NCBI RefSeq assembly: GCF_021869535.1
Contig: NW_026262690.1
Location: forward strand, 117,986,001 to 118,050,000
Reading direction: 5' to 3'
Length of the DNA: 64,000 nt
Source: Mytilus californianus
Taxonomy: Eukaryota
The translations under genes were made by a program, and so were the position numbers. The notes under the pieces are model-generated. The model was not told the origin of the DNA. It searched no databases and saw only the letters and a program-made list of their open reading frames with translations. This document shows positions 12,690 to 42,300 of this stretch, in pieces. How positions within the stretch are numbered: position 1 is the first letter of the stretch; each line of letters begins with the position of its first letter.

Positions 12690-13068
12690 GATGTAAAAAA
12701 TTGAAAACAACACGTTTAATAATTTCATGCGTCCGAAGCGCTTTTCTAGATTTACCTTCATCAGGAACGCTCAAAGCCAAACATTTGAAATCCGAGGGAT
12801 GTATAAGTACCGAAACAGTTGAAGAGCTATATGACAAAAATACCTAAAACAAATAGCCAAATCCATCTAAGGTCAACTTTGCCTGAGGGAGTTGAAACCT
12901 TAGTTTCTTTATAATTTCAAAATTTATAAACAGGCAATTTTAGAATTTTTTTTTATAAATCATGTCAGTACCGAAGTACTGACTACTGAGCTGATGATAC
13001 CCCCGGGGACTGATAGTCCACCAGCAGAGGTATCGACCCAGTGATGTAAAAAATTGAAAACAACACGT
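12690..13068 (-). mobile_element. Retrozyme-like element, family D, 353-nt unit plus 26-nt terminal redundancy
   Basis: GATGTAAAAAATTGAAAACAACACGT occurs at both 12690-12715 and 13043-13068; hammerhead motif inside. Confidence 0.8.
12729..12770 (-). ncRNA. Minimal type I hammerhead ribozyme motif
   Basis: Minus strand reads GCGTTC-CTGATGA-AGGTAAATCTA-GAAAAGCGCTTC/GGACGC. Helix I is GCGTTC:GGACGC, helix III is the palindrome AAGCGCTT, and predicted cleavage is between 12735 and 12734. Helix II is short and atypical. Confidence 0.65.
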
Positions 13069-20727: not shown

Positions 20728-23700
20728 TTAAGTTCCCACATTTTCCTCTTTAGATTCAGTCTCTATGTTGTCCTTTGAATTTTGAATAATGTCACATTTT
20801 TTCTCAGTAGCAAATTTAACAGCGTTCTGCAGAATAATTTTCTCACATCTCCTTAACTGTATTATAAATAGTTTATTGTCTGGTATACCAGATTCCATTA
20901 ACAGATTGGTATCCTCCTGTAATAAAAACAGAATATATAAGACACAGAATAAAGAAAGATGTGTAAGAAACAATATGATACTGTTTCATTTATATCGCTT
21001 CACAATTTGTCATGGAAAATAATTTTACCCTCAATCATAGAAAATAGGTCCAATTTGCCCCTGGATTCCCTCAGGTTTCAGTAAACAAGAGAGGCTGCAC
21101 CATAATGACAGGTCTTGTAATAATAGAGATAAAAATCTGTAATGTTGGACATCAACATGATATCACAGATCAGTTATACAAAATATGTTCTTTTCCTGAA
21201 GTTTTCAGATGAATTAAGAATATCCTAGTATTTCAGCAAACATTTAGTCAATAATGAAAGAAAGTTCATTAACATGATTCTATTCTGTAATAAACAGCTG
21301 CGCCATGAGCGCATGATACGCCCGTCGTCTTGTGTGTGAATTTTTATGCAATAAGCATAAATAGTTTCTGACATACGGCGTGACATGCAAAAACCCCCCT
21401 TTTTTTTTTACAAAAAACTCAATATCTCTAAAATAAAATTTTGAATCAAAACCAAAAAGTATACAGATCTTTAGATTAATATAACTAAGAAGTGTGTAAA
21501 ATTTTAAGCAATAATCATAAATCGTTTTTGAGATATGGCGCGACATGTGAAAACCCCCCCTTTTAAAAAAAAAAAAATCAATATCTCAAAAATAAGATCT
21601 TGTATCAAAACCAAAAAGTATACAGATCTTTAGATTAATATAACTAAGAAGTGTGTAAAATTTTAAGCAATAATCATAAATCGTTTTTGAGATACGGCGC
21701 GACATGTGAAAAACCCCTCCCCCTTTTTTTACAAAATACTCAATAACTCAAAAATAAAATTTTGAATCATCACCAAAAAGTATACAGATCTTAAGGTTAA
21801 TATAACTAAGAAGTGTGTAAAGTTTTAAGCAATAATCATAAACTGTTTTTGAGATACGGCGCGACATGTGAAAAACCCCTCCCCCTTTTTTAACAAAATA
21901 CTCAATATCTCTAAAATAAAATTTTGAATCATCACCAAAAAGTATACAGATCTTAAGATTAATATAACTGAGAAGTGTGTAAAGTTTTAAGCAATAATCA
22001 TTAACTGTTTTTGAGATACGGCGCGACATGTGAACAAAAACACACACCTGTTTTAGTTACTAAGTCCCGTAACTCAAAAAGTTTTAATCTTATTTTCACC
22101 AAAAAGTATACAGATCGTTTGACCATCATAAGAAACAACTATGTTAAGTTTCATGAAATTTGGATAAGTCATTCTCAAGTTACGGTGCGACATGTTAACG
22201 CCAGACAGACAGACGGACGGACCCCGGACATTTGTATACCATAATACGTCCCGTCAAAAATTTGACGGGCGTATAATAAAAAAAAGTTAAAAAATAATAA
22301 CACTATCATACCTCCGCTGTGGTATCATAAGCCCTCAGTAACAATGCCAGTCTTGTTTCTAAAAATTTCCACAATTTTTCTTCATTCTCCACATTAATTG
22401 GTGTGTTGACATCACCCATCTTTTCTAGGTCTTCTTCTGTCATGTTCTCACAGTCATAACAGGAGATTTCATCTACAATAAAGTCAATTACAATAAAGTC
22501 AGCAACACCCTTTAGACATTTTATGGAAAAAATATATTAAATTCTATAGTTACTTTACATTTTCAAAATGTCTGTGCTGTTGAAAACAAAAATAGTTTGA
22601 AATCTTCAGGACATATATCTTTCTTAAATTGCTTTTCTTAATTTCCCTTACCTCACAATACGTAGATATGCTCAAAATCTAATGCAGTATTTTTAATGCC
22701 CAAAATCCAATGCTTGTATTTTTAATGCTCAAAATCTAATACTGTATTATCAAACTAAAAAATACAAGATCAGAACAATATTGAAATAACTTATTACGAA
22801 CGAATACAGCATTATGGATCGAATTCCCCTATATAGATATGTAAAACTTACCTTCCGTCATATTAAATACTCTAAGAAAAGATACAAGGTGTGGATCTAC
22901 AGGGATTTCCCCTGAGTAAATAAAGAACATTCTGGACCTAAAAAATACAAAAATACATATAACAATGTTATTCCTTTGTCAGCATATACAGTGTTTACTT
23001 ACTGTATGCTGTCTTGAGCTTATAGTGAGGTGAAAGCTACCCTGAGATGAAGAACAGCAATAAAAGCTCTGTTCCTTTACTTTTGGTTTCTTTTCTTGTG
23101 TGTGTTTTGATTTTGTGTCATGAATTTATAAACTATATCCTTATTTTCATGACTTACTTAAACCATATCCTGTTTTAAGTGGAGTCATAATGAAGCATGA
23201 AAGCAACCTATAAACCCTGTTCAACTTGACATGTTTCTTCATGAGTACAATTAATAGTAGTTTTGAAAAGTGCTTTTCTGGGGTACTTTATGTTTGCTCC
23301 TCTCTAGGCAATTGAACATATGTACTTCCTATATTCATGAAACCACTCCCCCTTATATAAAAATGTAACTGTCATTATAATCTGTTTAATAAAGTAAAGT
23401 ATATTCTTCATTTTGGGTTAACTATAAACATCTTAATCTTTACTTACGGAGCTAAACCAAGAGCTGTTAATAATTTGGTTTTTTTGTCAATAAGGCTATC
23501 ACTTTTACTAATTCCTGAAAAAAAATCCTTACTTGATTTAATCATAAATTTTAAAGAGGTAAGCTGCTGAATTCACAATAATAACATTTTCATAAATTAA
23601 GTATTTCTACAACATTAGAAGATTACAAAATTATGGTTACATAAGGATAAGTGTAAATATAAAAATAAGAAGATGTGGTATAATTGCCAATGAGACAACT

Positions 23701-26700: not shown

Positions 26701-29700
26701 TGTGAAATCCATATATGTACATCTTAGTGGTTGTCATCATAGAGGTTGTCAGCATAGAGGTTGTCAGCATAGAGGTTGTCAGCATAGAGGTTGTCATCAT
26801 CTCTTTATCGTTGATGACTGTTCATTTAATTTAAGGATGTTGTGCTAACATTATCTTTGATTATCTCAGTTGGTTTGTCTCTCAGGTTATACTTTTTCTG
26901 GAGAGTTAAGATATTACTGTACAGTGTGCATGGCTTATTAACATACTAAACCAAAATACATTTTGTACTGAGATCTTCATTTTTTATCTGGATGCTGTTT
27001 CAATTTTCCATGCAGGTTTTTTTTTTTCAAAGCAAGCAACATCCATCAAATTTTATCAGAACTGCTTCATAAGTTCATAATCACCCCCTTTAAATTTTAC
27101 AGAAAGCATTAGGTTGCTACAATCAGTGAAGGAATCTCATTATCAAACTAAAAAATATGTTTACATTACTCTGGAAGTGTTAGGGTTTAGCTATTTGAAT
27201 AAATGAACTTTCAGTAAAACAATAATTCCTGACAAACTTACTGTTCCATTACAGTGATTACACATATCCCACATTGGTATCAGACCAAATGTGATCTTAC
27301 TGCCATCTGGTGTAGGGATCTGATTTTGTCTGGTCATAACTGTAGAAACTGCCCATCTGAAAAAATATTGAAGAAGTGTTTGAAATCATAAATAAATTAC
27401 ACCAAGATTGTGTCATAATTGATAATTTTTTTAACTCCATGAACACAAACTCAAATCTAAAATTTATAACAAAACAGTTATCTCCCCTTTGTAAATATAA
27501 ATAAATGAAATACATACAAAAAACTAAGAGCTATAAGCTTGCATTAATAACATTTTGTTTTTTTAAATCCCATAAAAACTGGACAAAAGTATTATTACAA
27601 CTATGTCTCACCTGTAATCATCAAAAGTAAAGCAGTCTTTTATTGGCAGCTTTGATGTTGTTGGCAAATTCTAAAAGAATCCAAAACAATTAAAGTAATT
27701 TAAAGTGTAACAAGCAATGTTGCTTGCCTAGAAATATTAAATATTCTAAAATGTCTTGGAATCTCCTTGACTAATTACAGAAATAATTATTCTTTACTGG
27801 AAGTTGGAACTGTTAAAACAGTATCTTTATACTTTTGTCAATTGAAGCTCAACATTACATAATAATGGTGATTTTCATGTTTTCTTTTAAAATTTAAATA
27901 GGAAGTCAGATAAAACAAGTGAATCTGTGAGCTACTGCCCACTAATGATACCCCCGTCTCGCTAAAAGTATAAGGTAAACAGGAATTTGTTGAGTGATGA
28001 ATCTGAAATCGCATCACACGGTATAGCTGACTCATATAAACCCTGAAAGCAAATTACAGAAATCCTTGTAAAGTAGTTCCTGAGAAAGATGCGACGAAAA
28101 ATATTCATGAGACGGACGGACTGACGGATGGAAAGTCAGAGGTAAAACAGTATACCCCCACTTTTTTAATGAAAAGTTCTGTTATCAAACCAGGAGGAGG
28201 CAAGTACATTATATGTCATGGTTTGTAGCTGCATCCTTCACCCACAAACCGTTATAAACATCATATCTTTGGAACAGCCAAAAATTGCAATTCAAGATGT
28301 GAGTCAACACAGATTAACTGTAAAGATGACTAAATAACATATTCAAAGAAGCTGCAGTTAGTTACCTGAAATAATCTGTAAAAGTAGGCATACTGTCTTG
28401 CTATGTTTTTTAACTGATTATAACAATCACCTAGAAAAGATATGTATAATAAAACATCATTATACTGAATTTATTATTGTTTTAAGCATGAGAATAAGTG
28501 TCTGTACATTTCAAAATTTGTACAATAACAACCCTGATCTGAAATATAAATAATTATTTATGTTGATCCAGTTTGCAGGTATGGATTCAGAAACTTGGTT
28601 TACAGAACGTAGATGCTTTAAATTGGTTACATGCATACAAAGCAACGCAAAATGGTAATTGCATATTTGGCATGTCTATAATAAAAACATCAGGCATTTC
28701 TTTAAAAGGTATGTAAGAATTTTTACCAAATTTTTCTCTTTCTTTATTGTATACAGTGGAATCATTTTTTGAGGAATATTACTTTATATCCATCTTCTTG
28801 TTCTATCTACACTTTCTCCTTTACTTCAAGTCACCATGGAAACATATCTAGTTTTATAAAAAACAGATGAAATAATGTATTGTTGCCTCAAAGACTGCTA
28901 CATCATATCAATGCTTAAAGAAATTTTCAGAATGATCCCTCAACAAAATGTACGCCAGATTCTTAAAACAAAACAAGGCTTCTGATAACTGGACCTTTGC
29001 ACCAATGGGGATAAACCTACTTATTCCAAGGGAGATAACTTACTTTGTACAGGAGAGCCTTTCAAAAGTTTGATTTCATCCTCTGTAAAGTAGAGTGGTG
29101 TACAATATGAATCTGGTAATACATCTATCATAAGTTAAGGTTATAAATATATAGCCATTTGTCACTCTATGCATTATGTCTCAAGTTGGTAGTAACAACT
29201 TGTATTGGGACTTTGAAGTGTAAGGACCAAAGGGTGGACCTTGGAGTGTAAGGACCAAAGGGTTTTTCCAAAAACTGAGAATCAGGGCTACTATGGTTTT
29301 AAACTTGAGTGTTCTTGGTTAAGCTGATAAACTCCACACTTAACAACAACATAAAAAGAATTAGGTCAACATATCCAAGCAAATTAGGTGAACAATTTCA
29401 ATTTAATTACACTGTTGAAATTCTGTCACTGGTGTCCATCATAAGCCTTGGAATAGGTATTATAAATGCTATACAATGACAATGTATTTTGTTTATTTTC
29501 CACAAGAGTTAAAAAAAAAATCCTACTAGTTTTTATTTTATATAAATTGTAGCTGAAGCCTAAAGTTACATTTTTGTAGCATGGGAAAGGGGAGGTAAGT
29601 CATTGTATTTTAATGAAAAAGTCCATTAAGAGTAGAAAACGGCTTTGTTAATTATGTAGCTTCCAAAATATTACCAGACATCATTGAGTGTATATGTTTG

Positions 29701-32700
29701 AGAAAGATTCTTGAAATAACAAAACGATATAATGCTTTATATGAATAATTGACCATTTGTAAGTCAGTTTCAGCTAAGTGAAAAATATATAAAAGGATAT
29801 CAACATAAGGTTTCCAGAATGATTCAGGTATCTTCTTCTCACAGAGCAGGTGTAGTGCTAGTAGTATACTGGGCATGGCTTGTAACATTTTATCTTGTCC
29901 TATTAATGGCCCTACAAAAAAAAATGCATAAACTGTGGTCTAAAATGGGTTATAATGATTTACGTAATACACATAAACATTTGAATATTGTAAACACTCA
30001 GTAATAAAAATATAAAATATGATTGTCAATATTAAAAAAAATATGCAGATTGTTTCATCGTTTATGATTTCTCTTTCCATTAACTTATTTATAATTAAAA
30101 TATTTTTATTTCCTCAAAAATGAGCTGACATGCACTGTTAATGACATTTTTATTTAACCATTGTTTTAGTTTTTAAATTTCTATGATGAAATGTGATGAT
30201 GAAATGTGAAGCAGATCTACATGTATCATGATTAAAATATTTGCTGTCTGCTGATCACATAATTGGATTACAATATCCCTCACAACCATATTTGGTGCAG
30301 ATGTTTTCAGTTTTTTTTTTAAAACTTGTTGCCTTATATTTGTATTTGGGATTTGCTCTATTGTTGACATATACCCTGTTTCAACATTTAAAAATCTTTT
30401 ACATTCATGATATCTTAATCCATCATTAAATATTAAAGGCTTTTCCATAAAAACATACATAGGACCCAGGGAAGGCACTTAAAGATGTCAACTGAGAGTT
30501 GGTGTTTTTGGACAGTGAAAGTGTAAGAGATATTATAAATTTGCATCTACAGAAGGAGGTAACCCCATTTTCAAAGTGCCTTCCTGGGTACAATGCTTTA
30601 ATGGAACAGCCCTAAATTTTATATATTACCCAATACTGAATCCCTGGCTGTTTGTGTTGTCATCATGACTTTTCTAGGTATGGTTAAAAATGGATCAGCC
30701 TCCTGCAGAAAGAATATATTGTTAATATATATACACATGTATTGCTCCTAAAAATCTAAAGAAAGTGTGTAATCCTAATGTAACTGAGAAAACTCATTTA
30801 ATGGAAGCCATCTTCAAGTTTCAGATTTTTTTTATAGGTTTCCTGAAAAGAGCAAATTTGCCTTAGAGCTATTGTCAAACCTGCTATAAAGGTCATCTCT
30901 GTTAAAAGAAAACCTGTCTTGTGTTGCTGTAGTAATAAATATGCATTTTGAACCTCAATACAAATGTGGTCCAACTTGTGAGGTCAGTTTTATCTGGTCC
31001 TGAGGGTGACCAATATATACATCTATCATACATTGTATTTTTGTTAATAAGATTATCATCCTTGCTAAAAAAAATTATAGCCGACTATACAGTAATTCTG
31101 TATGTGTTCTCCCTAGAATTTTCAAATAGCACCACGGAAATTAACATAGCACTGGTTTTCCAAAAATATAGCACCATGGCCCCTACACATTCTATTATAA
31201 AATCATCCAAGATAGCACCAGGGTAGAAAATATAGCACCAGGGTACCATGGTGCTTTATGGCCCTGGGGAGAACACTGACTACTGTATGGGTTTTTCTTC
31301 TCAATGCTGAAGGCTGTACGGTTGCCTATAATTGCTTACATCCACTTCATTTGAATTTTGGATAGTTGTATCATTGGCAATCATACCACATCTCCTTATT
31401 TTTGTATTGTGTTAATAAAAAGTTATAAAAGCTATCTATTAATAATTATCTGCTAATCAATTAAGCACTAACTTTGAGATCTTTGGTGGCTTGTAAGTCA
31501 TATTGTTAATCAATTTAGCACTAACTTTGAGATCTTTGGTGGCTTGCAAGCCATATCCACATCCAGGGAAGTTCTTTATCTCTACCACACTTGTTTCTAC
31601 CCCATTACTATGTAACCATTCTGTAAAGCCTGGGAAGTTCTTCTCTCTGTCTACTGCAGGAGTACCTAGAACTAGAAATAAAATATGACTCTCAATACTT
31701 CATGACTGGATAAATATTATATATATGTGTCGAGCCATGTTAGTCACTGCTATTACAAAACAATAAGTTGAAAAAAGACAGACAACATGGACAAAACCAT
31801 GCTCAAAAGAAAAAGACAAATGATTGTCCACATACCACTAGTGACTTCACAGAAAATTAAAGACTGAGAAATACTAACAAATCTTAAAGGTCATGTCAGG
31901 AACTATGTAAGGGTAAAAAGTTCATGCGCTACTAGTGGTCCTTTACAAATCTTTATAAATGACTTTGAAACACTACAGTAGTGCATGTTTTGCAAATCAA
32001 GTGTTGAAAATCGGTCAGAAAAAAAACATTTGGTCTGAACAAAGTGAACAGTTATTGCCAGTTAATACATGTACATGTAGATTTAAAGTTATTTGATTTA
32101 TATTAAGTAAAATTAAACCTCTACATTTACGTTTGCTTGTAGAAACACATAAACAATTAATATAGAAGAATTGTCTAATTTATAACTTTTTTTTATCATA
32201 ATAATCTGTGTAGTAGATACAGTGTGGTAACCATTTTAAAAATGATTAAAATGTGTCATTTACCTAATTGTCACAGGTGTTGTTTATATAACAATATAAA
32301 TACTTTCCACTTGCTCAATATGACTTTTATTTGAATTCCACTATCATGAGCAATTGAGTTAAAAAGTCTTGATTTCTAATACTGTCCTTCATGTAGAAAT
32401 AAAGTCTGTATATTTGTTTTTACAAATTGCCCCTGTTCATAAACCTATTATAATTATAGGTTCTTGTATGGTCCTCATTGTCTGAATCATAAAATTGAGA
32501 ATGGAAATGGGGAATGTGTCAAAGAGACAACAACTCGACCAAAGAGCAGAAAACAGGTCAAGGCCACAATGGGGCTTCTACACAGCAAGAAAATACTGCA
32601 CCCTGAGGCTGGCTTTAGCTGGCCCTAAAAAAAATGTATACTGGTTCAGAGAAAATGGATGTCGCACTAAACTCAAAAACATATAAATGAACCAAATAAG

Positions 32701-33853
32701 ATATAAAGGGACAGAGTTTATAGTGACATGCTGGCATAGTTTTTTTCTATAGAAAATTAACAGCCTGATATATATATATATATATATATATTTTAAAAAA
32801 ATAAAAGAAAGAGTTATAAAAGACAGCAACCACTGAAAGTCTCTAGAATACAGGCTTCTGGCTCTGGACAGGAATATTTGAATAAAAATTTGAAATGACA
32901 AATTACAAGGATTCTTGATAAGCATGTTATTATCAGCAAGACCTATTGGTACCATAACAATAATTTAACATGCCCTTTTATATGTACAGTGTATCAACGA
33001 ATCTAGTTATAATATGACATCATAATGAACTAGATAAAAATCACTGCATCTCAAATTACTGGCTAACTGCACCAGACAATTAAACCAACATGTAGTTCAA
33101 ATTAGTGTTGACCACATGATTGGGCATTTTATAACCAATGAGAGAAGATATTTAATTAAACTAACCTGACTGTAAGGTTGAGCATTTCATAACCAATGAG
33201 AGAAGAGATTTAAACTAACCTGACTGTAAAGTTGAACATTTTATAACCAATGAGAGAAGAGATTTAAACTAACCTGACTGTAAAGTTGAACATTTTATAA
33301 CCAATGAGAGAAGAGATTTAAACTAACCTGACTGTAAAGTTGAACATTTTATAACCAATGAGAGAAAAGATTTAAACTAACCTGACTGTAAATTTATCAG
33401 TTTATCAACTAGAGCCTTGATCTTCATATACTCCTCCAACTCTTTTGGACCAGCTGCATTCACAGGATTGGAACAAACTGAAATACATGCGATATTTATG
33501 AAAAGCTTGCTGATTATAATGCAAATATCTAATAGTTTTAGTTTCAGAATGGATGAAAAATTTCTATCACTTTCAACCTTCCTAGATCACCTGATATCAC
33601 CCCCTGGTTTTATGTTTCCAAGTAGTTTAAAGTATTGTGTGTTGTGAACATGTTTCATTGCTTTGAGGTTGGCCAAAAACAATTGCCCTATTAGATATAG
33701 ATATACATCATTTGTACATGTTACTGAATATTTACCTTCTAATAGTTGATTGACTGTATCCAAGACTTCTTTCTTTTCACCTTTTGATAATTCCTTATGT
33801 TCAGGAGAAGCTGCAGCTGGCTTTTCTTTATTCTTTTTACTTTTCTTTCCCAT
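20728..33853 (-). CDS. SETD3: Actin-histidine N-methyltransferase SETD3, 15 coding exons, 511 aa
   Basis: Exons 33853-33736, 33477-33382, 31665-31526, 30702-30630, 29911-29801, 29124-29044, 28430-28366, 27670-27612, 27356-27242, 26306-26232, 24335-24236, 23514-23448, 22937-22852, 22472-22312, 20916-20728. All phases are compatible and sum to 1536 nt. Diagnostic peptides: MGKKS, NIARQYAYFY, WAVSTVMTRQNQIP, LIPMWDMCNH, IFYGARSNAELLVHNGF, ENEEKLWKFLETR. Confidence 0.97.
21293..22276 (-). mobile_element. Non-autonomous Helentron-type (HINE/pearl-like) element with ~160-bp internal array, in the last SETD3 intron
   Basis: Subterminal inverted repeats ATACGCCCGTC/GACGGGCGTAT, (GACA/GACG)n microsatellite near 22200, terminal hairpin TGCGC-TCATG-GCGCA, repeat anchors at 21532, 21691, 21853 and 22015. 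Confidence 0.8.
25830..26062 (-). mobile_element. Degenerate copy of the 16882-17142 SINE
   Basis: Collinear similarity (GGAAAACT..CAA.CCT, GAACTCACAA, TTGAC.GGCTAGTGAT, GCCACC.AGGCCCC). Confidence 0.65.
26729..26800. repeat. 15-bp minisatellite, 4.8 copies
   Basis: GGTTGTCA(G/T)CATAGA tandem inside a SETD3 intron. Confidence 0.95.
29125..29800 (-). other. U12-type intron with AT-AG termini in SETD3
   Basis: 5' end ATATCCTTTT; branch site CCTTAAC (29140-29134) followed by only 9 nt to the terminal TAG; splicing gives in-frame FWKPYV-D-VLPDSYCTPLYF. Confidence 0.9.
30433..30613. mobile_element. Degenerate PIF/Harbinger-type MITE
   Basis: Imperfect TIRs GGCT.TTCCAT.AAA...CCCAGG.AAGGCACTT, related to the intact copy at 55299-55487. 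Confidence 0.55.
31102..31278. mobile_element. hAT-like MITE remnant
   Basis: TIR-like GTGTTCTCCCTAG / CTGGGGAGAACACTG; flanking 8-mers AATTCTGT and ACTACTGT match at 6 of 8 positions. Confidence 0.4.
32494..32705 (+). mobile_element. Interspersed repeat family C (TTGAGAATGGAAATGGGGAATGTGTCAAAGAGACAAC...)
   Basis: Second copy, inverted, at about 35695-35845. Confidence 0.85.
33125..33392. repeat. 54-bp tandem repeat (5 copies) spanning the SETD3 coding exon 2 donor
   Basis: Units start at 33125, 33183, 33237, 33291 and 33345; each contains minus-strand TTACAGTCAG|GTTAGTTTAA. Confidence 0.95.
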
Positions 33854-35845: not shown

Positions 35846-37938
35846 TTAAGAACACATAAAGTAACCAAGGATGTGACGTTACATAAGGAACACCAAAGTG
35901 TAACGTTACGTTATGCGCAATTAAAGTCATTACATTTCTCCATTTCTTCAAAAGTTTTGATCAATCATTTCAAATAAAGTGCTGTTGAATAAATTAATGT
36001 TCAAAATTAAAGTTTAAATTTTACAGTCCATATTTCACTGATGATATCATATTTGATATTTACAGCTGTCTATATTTGAAATCACACTACACAGTCTCTA
36101 AATCTAGCAGGTGGTCTTCTTGTTCGGATTGGCATCTCTCTTCTTCATCCTTGTGCAACCATGTGTTTATCTCCATTCTGTTTAGTGTGCATCAAAATTC
36201 TATCTTGCCACTTATGATTTGAGTTCGGAATGTCAATGTTATTTGCGAGTTTGAAGTGTGAAGAGTCACGAAACACTTTTCTTCCGTCTGACTTTCGTTG
36301 AGCTCCTATGCTTGATCCGGATATTTTGTATACGATATACGGTTCAAGTTCATATGCAGTTGACCATTTATTCCTTTTCTCTTGCTTGAATATGACACGG
36401 TCACTGATTTTAAACGAATGTTCTCTATACCTCCTTTTTGTGAATGTTTATTTAAAACATTTTGTTTGTATTCTTTGTCTCTTTGTTTGATCTTCTTGTT
36501 CGTGTTTTCAGTTTTATTGCTGTTCCTTACGTGGTCTAATTTAGTCCTTGCTGCTTTGTTTTTTATATCTGGTATTTTATGTTCAAATTTTACATTTCCA
36601 CCCTGAATTCCTAATTTATTTAGCTCTTTTAATGTGCCATCTTCTTTTATTTGTAGCATGCCTAATTCAATAAGTGTTTTCTTTCCAATAAGTGGTGGTT
36701 AATTAGTTTTTCCTTTAATCACAATTATTTTTGTTTTTATCCCTCGTGTTGCATTTCTCACTGTTGTAATAAATTCTCCTTTTTCTTTTAAACTGGTTTG
36801 CAAAGTACTCAATTTCGTTTTGCTTTCTAATAATTCAGTTCCATCACTAGTTCTGTTTTTGTATGCTCTGTACTGATACTCGTCCATTACGTTGACGTCG
36901 GCTCCACTATCTGGTTCTACTTCCACTTGTACATCATTCATCATAACTAGTACTGGTTTTGCTTTGTCTCCGATTTTATGTACATTTATTTTCTTAACTG
37001 CTCCCAAATGATTCACTGTACTTCTGAAAAACTCATCATCTGAACATTCTTCTTCGCTTGTGTCTTCCATTGTTTTCCTAACATTCCTACCTTAATTCGT
37101 TCAGTGTGTCATTGATTCCTGAATCGATCATTATCATGGTTTATGGATTGCAATCTCGATTTGCAAACTACAGCAAAATGATTCCTTTTCTGACATTTGT
37201 TATACTGTTTTCCGTAGCTCCTCAATCTTCACGTCGTTCAAACGAATGTGTTTTTCCACAATAATTACAATAATTGTCTGTGTTTTCTCTATATATTGCA
37301 TGCCGTAATTTCTTTGTTTTCCTCCATAATTCGTCACGATTGCAATTTCTCCGGCTCTTGATGCTGTATGTATATCCCTCATGTCATGTATCTGCAATGT
37401 CGTATCTTCTAACTGGTGTACTTCCTGTAACATTTGATCAAGTGTCCAATTTCTGTTAATCGTCTCTTTGATTAGCAATTCATTATCTGTGGTTTGAATA
37501 ATGTGTTCTAAAATTCTGTCATCTTGATTTTCAAACTCACAATCAGCAGCTCTCTCTCATAGTCATGTCGCGTTTGCCACTGTTGACTCTCCATTAATCG
37601 GTCGCATTTTCAGAAATACGCATCTCGCATAATGTTTGTTCTTCTTTGGAGCAAAATGATCATTCAGTTTCTTCTTTATCTTCTCATATACATCCATGCG
37701 TCTGTCTACGGGGTCAGGTGTACTTTTCTCTTATCTTGAAATTTCTTTACCTCCGTAAATTATCATTACGTCCTTTTTGTCCTGGGATCTGTAATGCGAA
37801 AATATCGGAATTCTCTTTCTATTCCTTCTAGCCCCATTCCTCCCACTGACTGCCCGTGGTGAGATGATCCTCCAACGGTGTGAACGGTAAAGTTCTCAAA
37901 TTTCTGTTTCCTGTCACTACTGTAATTCTTTCAGCCAT
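35846..37938 (-). mobile_element. Internally deleted, degenerate Ty3/Gypsy LTR retrotransposon
   Basis: gag from ATG 37938 (QWEEW..IEREFRYF, KLNDHFAPKKNKHYAR, DRILEHIIQT), a CCHC-like knuckle and protease PDSGADVNVM, then a short pol-end-like tail with no RT, RNase H or integrase. Polypurine tract GAAGAAATGGAGAAA (35949-35935) is followed by TG at 35934. Stops and frameshifts present. Confidence 0.85.
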
Positions 37939-38002: not shown

Positions 38003-38321
38003 ATACAAATTTATGGGAAATATTATGTTCCTACTACAGTAATCATATACAAATTTGTGGGAAATATTATGTTCCTACTACAGTAATCATATACAAATTT
38101 ATGGGAAATATTATGTTCCTACTTCAGTAATCATATACAAATTTATGGGAAATATTATGTTCCTACTACAGTAATCATATACAAATTTATGGGAAATATT
38201 ATGTTCCTACTTCAGTAATCATATACAAATTTATGGGAAATATTATGTTCCTACTTCAGTAATCACACACAAATTTGTGGGAAATATTATGTTCCTACTA
38301 CAGTAATCATATACAAATTTG
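38003..38321. repeat. 44-bp tandem repeat, 7 full copies plus a partial
   Basis: ATACAAATTT(A/G)TGGGAAATATTATGTTCCTACT(A/T)CAGTAATCAT with period 44. Confidence 0.95.
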
Positions 38322-39345: not shown

Positions 39346-42300
39346 ATGCCTTGTTGGTACTTTGATAAGAAAGAGATACGAAACACACCAACCCACAGAG
39401 ATGGGATTGATCCAACAACAGAAGCCAGATACAGAAGGGAAGGGGCAAGATTTATCATTGACGCAGGAACAAAGATGGGACTGTATCCTTGTATAAAAAT
39501 TCACATTTTGTTTTAGTCATACAACATGTACAAATGTACAATAACATGTTAGTAAGTTTTATTTTTGAATAGATCCACCAACTTCCTGTCTCTATAACAT
39601 TCAGGTAGTTCTGACGCACCTTACTAATTGCACAAACCTAGAGTGGGTCTTGGAATTTTACCATAGTAGTGATAAGGGGGCAGATATTGACCATCTACAT
39701 GTACAAAAATATAAACTACATGTATCTACTCGGCCATACATGTATATGTAGACATTTTATTATCATTACTAATTCATATTTGCAGAAGTACAGTAGGTGT
39801 TGGAATCATACAAATGCTGATCTTTTATGGGCTTAAAGACAAATCATTTGATTCTGTCATATGCTTTCTTTTGTATGAAAACAATCCCTGCCATATGAAA
39901 GACCCAAGATTATAGAATTATTATAATTAGCTCGGCCTAATCTACACAATACTTCGTGCAAACGATTATGCTTTTTGAAAAATACCACATTTTATTCATT
40001 TGAAAACAGAAAGAAATGTGATTTACTTTATTTATGTATCTTGTTAATATGGAGTATTGATGAACATAGTAAATTAGTATTATATACATGATATATATGT
40101 CTATATAACGGTATGTGAAAATTAGAAAGACTCAGATGAATCTTTTTTTCTGCTTGCACTGTCAATATTTAAAGATGCCTCTCAGATTTTTATATACAAC
40201 TAGATAACAAAAATGTAACAGAACAACAGAATGGGTTTTAAATAGATTTGACTGACGTTTCTCAAAGCTTACATACATGTACATTGTGTAGTGATAGAAC
40301 GGTAGGCATTATTTAAATCAATTGATTGAATTGAATCATTTGATAGACACAAGTCCTTATTTTGACTTTTCCTTAACCTACCCTCAGGAGATATGATACA
40401 TGTGCCACTGGTGTAGTATATTTTCACAGATTTTATCTTTTCCATTCTTTTAAAGATTTCCACCGATATGTAAGTATTAATGTTTAGAAGTTTTGTAGCT
40501 TATGTCATATGTGTTGCTTTTTTTTCCTTTTCGATACCTTTTGCACTTTTGTGATGTCATCCAAACTTCAAATATTGAATATATTTGTTCCTGAGTACTT
40601 TGCAATTAATTTTACAATACAAACATTTACTCTTTAGGCCAGGCAAAAAGGATTGATTGTTTCCCCTAACCCTGCTGGGTCTGTTTTACCTTGTGGGTCA
40701 GTTCTTTTTTAGCTCACCTGGCCCGAAGGGCCAAGTGAGCTTTTCTCATCACTTGGCGTCCGTCGTCGTCGTTAACTTTTTACATTTTGAACTTCTTCTA
40801 GAGAACCACTGAATGGAATGAAACCAAACATGGCATGAATGTTCCTTATGAGGTTCTGACCAAGTGTTGTTACTTTGTAGCGGATCCATCATCCAAGATG
40901 GCCGCCAGCAGGGGACTTAGTTTAACATAGGACCCTATGGGAAATACATACAAATGTCTTCTTTTAGAGAACCAGTGAATGGAATGAAACAAAACATTGC
41001 AATAATGTTCCTTATGAGGTGCTGACCAAGTGTTGTTACTTTGCAGTCGGTCCATCATCCAAGATGGCCGACAGCGGGGGACTTAGTTTAACATAGGACC
41101 CTATGGGAAATACATACAAATGTCTTCTTTTAGAGAACCAGTGAATGGCATGAAACCAAACATGGCATGAATGTTCCTTATGAAGTGCTGACCAAGTGTT
41201 GTTACTTTGCAGCCGATCCATCATCCAAGATGGCCGCCAGTGGGTGACTTAGTTTAACATAGGACCCTATGGGAAATACATACAAATGTCTTCTTTTAGA
41301 GAACCACCGAATGGAATGAAACCAAACATGGCACGAATGTTCCTTATGAGGTGCTGACCAAATGTTGTTACTTTGCAGCCGATCCATCATCCAAGATGGC
41401 CGCCAGCGGGGGGACTTAGTTTAACATAGGACCCTATGGGAAATACATACAAATGTCTTCTTTTAGAGAACCACTGAATGGAATGGAACCAAACATGGTA
41501 TGAATGTTCCTTATGAGGTGCTGACCAAGTCTTGTTACTTTGCAGTCAGTCCATGATCCAAGATGGCACCCAGGGGGGGACTTAGTTTAATTTAGGACCT
41601 TATGGGAAATACATACAAATGTCTTCTTTTAGAGAACCACTGAAAGGAATGAAACCAAACATGGCACGAATGTTCCTTATGAGGTGTTGACCAAGTGGTG
41701 TTTCTTTGCAGCCGATCCATCATCCAAGATGGCCGCTAGCGGGGGACTTAGTTTAACATAGGACCTTATGGGAAATACATACAAATGTCTTCTTTCAGAG
41801 AACCACTGAATCGAATGAAACCAAACATGGCATGAATGTTCCTTATGAGGTGCTGACCAAGTCTTGTTACTTTGCAGTCAGTCCATGATCCAAGATGGCA
41901 CCCAGGGGGGGACTTAGTTTAATTTAGGACCTTATGGGAAATACATACAAATGTCTTCTTTTAGAGAACCACTGAATTGAATGAAACCAAACATGGCATG
42001 AATGTTCAAGATGGTCAACAGGATATTTTATTAAATAACTGGACCAATATTAAACCAAATTTGGCCTCAATCATTATTTGGGTATATGTTATGATTTTTA
42101 TCTATCTTTACATGATTTCTAAAACCAAAGTAGAGTCAGGTGAGCGACACAGGCTCTTGAGAGCCTCTAGTTTTCTTTTCTTTTTTTTGCAGGTGAAAAA
42201 AAAATGTTGCTTTGGTTTCAATTGACAATTTTCAATAATGCTTTTTAAAATTGTCTGATAATCTCTTTTAAAAAAGTGTTTCATCCTTGCTCAATTGTCA

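What the first reader, a model, noticed from the sequence alone, without database searches (positions are those of the whole stretch)
29125..29800. Rare AT-AG minor-spliceosome intron in the SETD3 catalytic domain
Seen: the exon ends TAT GTT G, then ATATCCTTTT (U12 donor consensus); CCTTAAC branch site, then 9 nt to a terminal AG rather than AC. This junction restores the conserved FWxPY...LP..Y.TPLYF reading, and the nearby GT (GTTGAT) is out of phase. Known: U12 introns are usually GT-AG or AT-AC; mixed AT-AG ends are rare. Inference: an intermediate in AT-AC to GT-AG subtype switching, probably slow to splice and missed by gene predictors (the ORF track runs into this intron).
Basis: partly seen in the sequence, partly recalled or inferred. 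Interest (0 to 1): 0.8.

Follow-up and report, generated by a model that had tools for sequence, protein, structure and literature searches.

The report
AT-AG minor-spliceosome intron in SETD3
A mollusc copy of the actin-histidine methyltransferase gene SETD3 has a real, cleanly spliced minor-spliceosome (U12-type) intron with the uncommon AT...AG ends, but that intron subtype is already catalogued, so this is a well-supported ordinary example.

Summary
On the minus strand a SETD3 exon ends ...CCTTATGTTG. The intron starts ATATCCTTTT at 29800, carries CCTTAAC at 29140-29134, and ends in AG at 29126-29125.

- **RNA support:** reads and contigs from three studies skip exactly 676 nt here. Of the four equivalent placements of that skip, only AT..AG puts the U12 donor motif in register.
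- **DNA support:** every sampled 31-mer spanning base 29800 occurs in DNA runs of at least seven studies under three species labels, so the 5' A is real and shared. The 3' G rests on the assembly and one independent DNA contig.
- **Neighbours:** the five flanking SETD3 introns are ordinary GT-AG introns with pyrimidine tracts.
- **Splicing efficiency:** no reads lie in the intron, against 13 junction reads. Steady-state retention is therefore below about 4%, and "slow to splice" is not supported.

AT-AG is the commonest non-canonical U12 subtype in human and mouse (Sheth 2006), and that paper already proposed it as a subtype-switching intermediate. SETD3 is not in the MIDB human and mouse minor-intron gene lists, while neighbouring CCNK is. 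I could not obtain orthologous introns, so the switching history is untested.

Verdict: confirmed, a new member of a known kind, low interest.

The parts
29801..29911 (-). SETD3 coding exon upstream of the intron. It encodes ...PLIGQDKMLQAMPSILLALHLLCEKKIPESFWKPYV plus the first base (G) of a split Asp codon.
   Evidence: RNA contigs and reads, boundaries, PDB match to SETD3 residues 142-175 at E=6e-9.
29125..29800 (-). U12-type (minor spliceosome) intron, 676 nt, phase 1, with termini AT...AG.
   Evidence: A joint skipping 676 nt is seen in X21 raw RNA reads (13 reads, 12 starts) and in X1 and X5 contigs. Sequence.
29791..29800 (-). 5' splice site ATATCCTTTT, a perfect match to the U12 A-type donor consensus ATATCCTTT.
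   Evidence: All sampled 31-mers spanning 29800 are held by DNA runs of seven studies under three species labels.
29134..29141 (-). Branch-point sequence ACCTTAAC, matching 7 of 8 positions of TCCTTAAC. The candidate branch adenosines at 29136 and 29135 lie 11 and 10 nt from the 3' end of the intron.
   Evidence: The optimum of 11-13 nt and the use of either A are from PMC3584512.
29125..29126 (-). 3' terminal dinucleotide AG, in the context GATAG|ATGT, with no polypyrimidine tract upstream.
   Evidence: The X19 DNA contig 29072-29295 shows no listed difference here.
29044..29124 (-). SETD3 coding exon downstream of the intron. It supplies (G)AT and then encodes VLPDSYCTPLYFTEDEIKLLKGSPVQ.
   Evidence: RNA contigs, boundaries, PDB match to SETD3 residues 178-198.
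27238..31673 (-). Stretch of the SETD3 gene with RNA-confirmed exons at 31526-31673, 30630-30702, 29801-29911, 29044-29124, 28366-28430, 27612-27670 and 27238-27356. The other five introns are GT-AG with pyrimidine tracts.
   Evidence: Exon 27239-27355 matches SETD3 at E=1e-16.

Best explanation
The intron at 29125-29800 (minus strand) of a mollusc SETD3 orthologue is a genuine U12-dependent intron of the A-type AT-AG subtype.

Inferred mechanism, from established knowledge of the minor spliceosome:
- U11 and later U6atac pair with ATATCCTTT and fix cleavage just 5' of the A at 29800.
- U12 pairs with ACCTTAAC and bulges one of the two adenosines.
- The 3' site is chosen mainly by its distance from the branch point, 10-11 nt, so the first usable dinucleotide (AG) is taken whatever its identity.

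Shown here:
- The product joins G|AT into an Asp codon and restores the conserved SETD3 sequence PYVDVLPDSYCTPLYF.
- The intron is removed efficiently at steady state.
- Its 5' A is fixed in the DNA of several related species labels.
For: - The sequence motifs sit at the exact intron borders.
- A 676-nt skip is seen in RNA of three studies, with no GT-AG placement possible among the four equivalent registers (AT..AT, TA..GA, AT..AG, GA..TA).
- Only the AT..AG register starts with RTATCCTT.
- There is no polypyrimidine tract, unlike the five neighbouring GT-AG introns.
- The alignment to human SETD3 across the junction has no gap, and the frame is open over seven exons.
- The first mates lie on the + strand only, which fits a minus-strand transcript.
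- The 5' A at 29800 is held in DNA runs of seven studies under organisms A, B and C.
- A second U12 intron (CCNK, GT-AG) in the same window fits a working minor spliceosome in this genome.
- Molluscs are reported as relatively rich in minor introns (bioRxiv 10.1101/2022.09.24.509304).
Against: - The register within the 3-nt ambiguity is inferred from the consensus, not observed.
- The 3' terminal G has less independent DNA support than the 5' A: the assembly plus one X19 contig. Some differences in the read laying tables were not shown.
- The branch sequence has A instead of T at its first position.
- A distance of 10-11 nt is at the lower edge of the 11-13 nt optimum.
- Dependence on U11, U12 and U6atac was not tested.
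Confidence: 0.9

Rival explanations
1. The intron is really a canonical AT-AC U12 intron, and the terminal G at 29125 is an assembly error or a minor allele.
For: Spliced RNA cannot distinguish G from C at 29125. The species is very polymorphic: X19 contigs differ from the window by 3-5% in introns. Seventy-six differences in that table were not shown.
Against: The X19 contig covering 29072-29295 lists eight differences, none at 29125 or 29126. The assembly itself reads G.
Confidence: 0.04
2. The true cleavage register is one of the other three equivalent placements (AT..AT, TA..GA or GA..TA), so the intron is not AT-AG.
For: read laying reports 'both = 3', meaning the joint can be shifted by 0 to 3 nt with the same mRNA. 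AT-AT is itself a known non-canonical U12 subtype (PMC1557818).
Against: In the AT..AT register the intron would begin ATCCTTTTAT, two bases out of register with the RTATCCTT motif that U11 and U6atac recognise. The other two registers have termini that do not appear in Sheth's table of non-canonical U12 introns.
Confidence: 0.04
3. A non-canonical intron removed by the major (U2) spliceosome, or a reverse-transcription template-switch artefact at the short GAT/ATA repeat.
For: A 3-nt microhomology flanks the joint.
Against: The joint is the only form listed, in three independent studies, and it preserves the frame and conserved residues. The donor and branch motifs are perfect or near-perfect U12 signals, and there is no pyrimidine tract. 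U2-type AT-AC introns need AC at the 3' end.
Confidence: 0.02

Closest known systems
Human and mouse AT-AG U12-type introns (for example NUP210, USP21, RAPGEFL1, INPP5B, XPO4, ACTR10, SCN10A, CUL4B; Sheth et al. 2006, PMC1557818)
   Same: They share the U12 donor ATATCC..., a U12 branch site close to the 3' end, and a terminal AG instead of AC. AT-AG is the most frequent non-canonical U12 class in that survey: 11 human, 8 mouse, 1 Arabidopsis.
   Different: The host gene and the phylum differ. SETD3 is not in the MIDB human and mouse minor-intron gene lists.
A-type (AT-AN) minor introns as defined by de Wolf et al. 2021 (CENATAC, PMC8280824)
   Same: The 5' A and a variable 3' terminal base place this intron in that class.
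   Different: In human cells A-type introns show raised basal retention. Here no retention is seen at the depth available. CENATAC dependence was not tested.
The CCNK U12-type GT-AG intron in the same window (+ strand, 39483 to about 40386)
   Same: It lies in the same genome and beside SETD3, with a U12 donor GTATCCTTG and a branch site TTCCTTAAC 11 nt from the AG.
   Different: It is the G-type canonical subtype, and it appears to be conserved as a minor intron in human and mouse CCNK, unlike the SETD3 intron.

Membership tests
U12-type (minor spliceosome) intron | 5' splice site matching RTATCCTTT from intron position +1 | tested here: met
   ATATCCTTTT at 29800-29791. This is the only register of the RNA joint that fits.
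U12-type (minor spliceosome) intron | Branch-point sequence like TCCTTRAY lying about 10-15 nt from the 3' splice site | tested here: met
   ACCTTAAC at 29141-29134, with the branch adenosine 10 or 11 nt from 29125. The optimum is 11-13 nt according to PMC3584512.
U12-type (minor spliceosome) intron | No polypyrimidine tract before the 3' splice site | tested here: met
   The last 25 nt read TTATAACCTTAACTTATGATAG, whereas the five neighbouring introns have T-rich tracts.
U12-type (minor spliceosome) intron | The intron is actually removed at these borders in mRNA | tested here: met
   13 junction reads in X21 and contigs in X1 and X5, from three studies.
U12-type (minor spliceosome) intron | Splicing depends on the U11, U12, U4atac and U6atac snRNPs | not testable with these tools
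   This needs knockdown or in vitro splicing.
AT-AG subtype | Terminal dinucleotides AT at the 5' end and AG at the 3' end in genomic DNA | tested here: met
   The 5' A is held in DNA runs of seven studies. The 3' AG is in the assembly and in the X19 contig, with no listed difference. The register is inferred from the donor consensus.
Subtype-switching intermediate (AT-AC to GT-AG) | Orthologous introns in related lineages carry AT-AC and/or GT-AG termini | not tested
The word search with the exon ORF found nothing. Only the 5' site is known to be shared, under three species labels.
SETD3 (actin-histidine N-methyltransferase) orthologue | Best sequence similarity to SETD3 along the SET domain | tested here: met
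   Three exons each hit only SETD3 chains in the PDB, with E = 6e-9, 4e-3 and 1e-16. Enzyme activity was not tested.

The most novel reading that the evidence does not exclude
AT-AG here is not a short-lived, poorly spliced intermediate. It is a stable, efficiently spliced state fixed across several related bivalve species, in a gene whose mammalian orthologue has no minor intron. If the orthologous intron proved to be AT-AG over deep molluscan time, it would argue against the view that mixed termini are disfavoured because they splice badly.
Probability: 0.35. Interest if true: 0.3.

Novelty: new member of a known kind. Interest (0 to 1): 0.2.

Why it matters
The finding gives a correct gene model for SETD3 in this mollusc, because predictors limited to GT-AG and AT-AC introns would break the SET domain here. 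It also adds a transcript-verified invertebrate example of the AT-AG minor-intron subtype.

Two side points follow. SETD3 carries a minor intron in this mollusc although it is absent from the MIDB human and mouse lists. An AT-AG minor intron can also be removed without visible retention. None of this changes current understanding: the subtype, its frequency and the switching-intermediate idea are all already published.

Tried and rejected
- **Homologue word search.** I queried with the 84-aa exon-plus-read-through ORF (window:29655-29906:-), hoping to pick up orthologous genomic ORFs. No candidate was found. All exons are short, so no stop-free reference can reach full-length SETD3 proteins within the tool's length limits.
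- **Paper searches.** 'SETD3' with 'minor intron' gave 0 papers. 'SETD3' with 'U12' gave one irrelevant paper.
- **Supplement searches.** The CENATAC paper has no SETD3, and Bartschat & Samuelsson 2010 has no SETD3 or Lottia.
- **Alternative junctions, by translation.** The GT at 29804 with the same AG breaks the frame. The AC ending at 29116 and the CAG ending at 29113 stay in frame but delete 3 and 4 residues, including the conserved LP. Neither is among the listed joints.
- **Rfam scan of the window.** No matches at gathering thresholds.
- **Pfam on four long minus-strand ORFs at 36148-37556.** No families.
Full report
**What is in the sequence.** The gene lies on the minus strand. Reading that strand, an exon ends ...GAATCATTCTGGAAACCTTATGTTG at 29801. 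The next ten bases are ATATCCTTTT (29800-29791). Near the far end of the interval the sequence reads TTATAACCTTAACTTATGATAG|ATGTATTACCAGATTCATATTGTACACCACTCTACTTT, with CCTTAAC at 29140-29134 and AG at 29126-29125.

**The gene is SETD3.**
- The upstream exon translates to ...IGQDKMLQAMPSILLALHLLCEKKIPESFWKPYV and matches only SETD3 chains in the PDB (E=6e-9, human residues 142-175).
- The downstream exon translates to (V)LPDSYCTPLYFTEDEIKLLKG and matches residues 178-198 of the same chains.
- The split codon G|AT (Asp) and the following Val fill residues 176-177, so the alignment across the junction has no gap.
- A third exon (27239-27355) matches SETD3 at E=1e-16.
- Stop-to-stop translation of the minus strand shows SETD3-like pieces from about 33.9 kb down to about 20.7 kb.

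**RNA evidence.** I laid one raw RNA-seq run of the same species label (X21), two transcript-contig runs from other studies (X1, X5) and one DNA-like run (X19) on 27000-32000.
- All three RNA data sets show a joint from 29122 to 29799 that skips 676 nt. X21 gives 13 reads from 12 start sites, and X1 and X5 give one long contig each.
- Three letters fit on either side of the joint, so four placements give the same mRNA. On the minus strand these are AT..AT, TA..GA, AT..AG and GA..TA.
- None of the four is GT-AG or GC-AG, so the intron is non-canonical under any reading.
- That register is an inference from how U11 and U6atac define the 5' site, not an observation.
- The five other joints in the stretch are all GT..AG on the minus strand, and their introns end in T-rich tracts. 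This intron ends in ...TTATAACCTTAACTTATGATAG.
- The seven RNA-defined exons give an open reading frame.
- First mates lie on the + strand only over the exons, as expected for a minus-strand mRNA in a common stranded library.

**DNA evidence for the terminal letters.**
- I queried the run index with the 61-nt stretch 29770-29830. Every 31-mer in that stretch spans base 29800.
- All three sampled words are held by DNA-like runs of seven studies (P14-P20) under three species labels (A, B, C). Two of the three words are held by X19 and X20.
- At most one of those studies can be the source of the assembly. The A at +1 is therefore neither an assembly error nor a private allele.
- For the 3' end, the X19 contig 29072-29295 differs from the window at eight listed positions, none at 29125-29126. 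This support is weaker, and some differences in that table were not displayed.

**More than chance.** On both strands together, about 128,000 positions, the window holds 7 RTATCCTT and 5 CCTTAAC sites. My rough estimate is 1e-8 for an RNA-defined intron to start with the first motif and to carry the second 10-11 nt from its end. A scan pairing donors with branch sites finds only two convincing pairs in the window: this intron, and one in the neighbouring CCNK gene.

**Mechanism.** By established knowledge of the minor spliceosome (review PMC3584512):
- U12-type introns are defined by the donor and branch sequences, not by their terminal dinucleotides.
- Either adenosine of the branch consensus can be used.
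- The 3' site is chosen largely by distance, with an optimum of 11-13 nt.

Here the adenosines at 29136 and 29135 lie 11 and 10 nt from the intron end, and the first usable dinucleotide at that distance is AG. Two further in-frame sites exist downstream: an AC ending at 29116 (19 nt from the branch point, deleting 3 residues) and a CAG ending at 29113 (deleting 4 residues). Neither appears among the listed joints, and both would remove the conserved Leu-Pro. The intron is phase 1, which fits the known bias of minor introns away from phase 0.

**Splicing efficiency.** In X21 the bins from 29171 to 29671 have zero depth, while the exons stand at roughly 15-20 reads per position and the junction has 13 reads. 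A simple Poisson bound puts steady-state retention below about 4%. The neighbouring U2 introns are equally empty apart from their repeats. Only about 6% of the run was read, and it is a cDNA library of mature RNA, so slow kinetics cannot be excluded. There is no positive sign of it.

**Comparison with what is known.**
- Sheth et al. 2006 (PMC1557818) list AT-AG as the most common non-canonical U12 class: 11 human, 8 mouse and 1 Arabidopsis intron. Several are conserved between human and mouse, and several switch to GT-AG.
[quoted passage not shown] Turunen et al. repeat the idea and add that such intermediates may splice poorly.
- de Wolf et al. 2021 (PMC8280824) group AT-AC, AT-AA, AT-AG and AT-AT as 'A-type' minor introns that depend on CENATAC.
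- Larue and Roy (bioRxiv 10.1101/2022.09.24.509304) catalogue non-canonical minor termini across animals and report molluscs as relatively rich in minor introns.

**SETD3 elsewhere.** The supplementary tables of the MIDB paper (PMC6717393) contain CCNK in both human and mouse but not SETD3. The CENATAC data sets do not contain SETD3 either. So mammalian SETD3 is not listed as a minor-intron gene. Whether mammals lost this intron or converted it to U2-type I could not determine.

**What I could not do.** The orthologous intron in other species is the one test that bears on the 'switching intermediate' reading. The word-based protein search with the exon ORF found nothing. Every exon is too short to reach full-length proteins under the tool's length rule. 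I fetched no human DNA; the only human material was the PDB protein alignments returned by the tool.

**Verdict.** This is a real, transcript-verified U12-type AT-AG intron in a mollusc SETD3 gene, and a new member of a known kind. Interest is low, at 0.2. The earlier first-reader notes on this genome mention other U12 introns, including CCNK next door. I checked the CCNK motifs myself.

Noticed in passing
window 39483-40386 (+): The neighbouring CCNK-like gene has a U12-type GT-AG intron. The exon ...GTKMG ends before GTATCCTTGT, TTCCTTAAC lies 11 nt before CAG|, and the next exon reads [16 protein letters not shown]. The human and mouse CCNK minor-intron donors listed in MIDB have a similar 5' site, so this looks like a deeply conserved minor intron.
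   Followed up: partly
window 27835-28168, 30340-30506, 31175-31508: Very high-copy repeats lie inside SETD3 introns. DNA contig word depth reaches a thousand to over a million, with RNA reads on both strands and many loose ends.
   Followed up: no
window 21332-22034, 33125-33392, 38003-38320, 40792-42007: Four tandem arrays: 162 nt x4.4 inside a SETD3 intron, 54 nt x4.9 near the SETD3 5' exons, 44 nt x7.2, and 166 nt x7.3. The last carries repeated open reading frames on the minus strand.
   Followed up: no
window 36148-37556 (-): Several long ORFs (100-130 aa) lie between SETD3 and CCNK in a stretch with strong AT and GC skew. None has a Pfam match. This may be a decayed mobile element.
   Followed up: partly
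window 1-64000: The Rfam gathering-threshold scan of the whole window found no RNA family, although an earlier first-reader note claims a hammerhead retrozyme at 12690-13068.
   Followed up: no
window 27000-32000: The DNA contigs of run X19 (same species label) differ from the window by about 3-5% in introns, for example 11 differences in 224 nt at 29072-29295. The listed differences leave the last 44 nt and the first 72 nt of the U12 intron unchanged.
   Followed up: no
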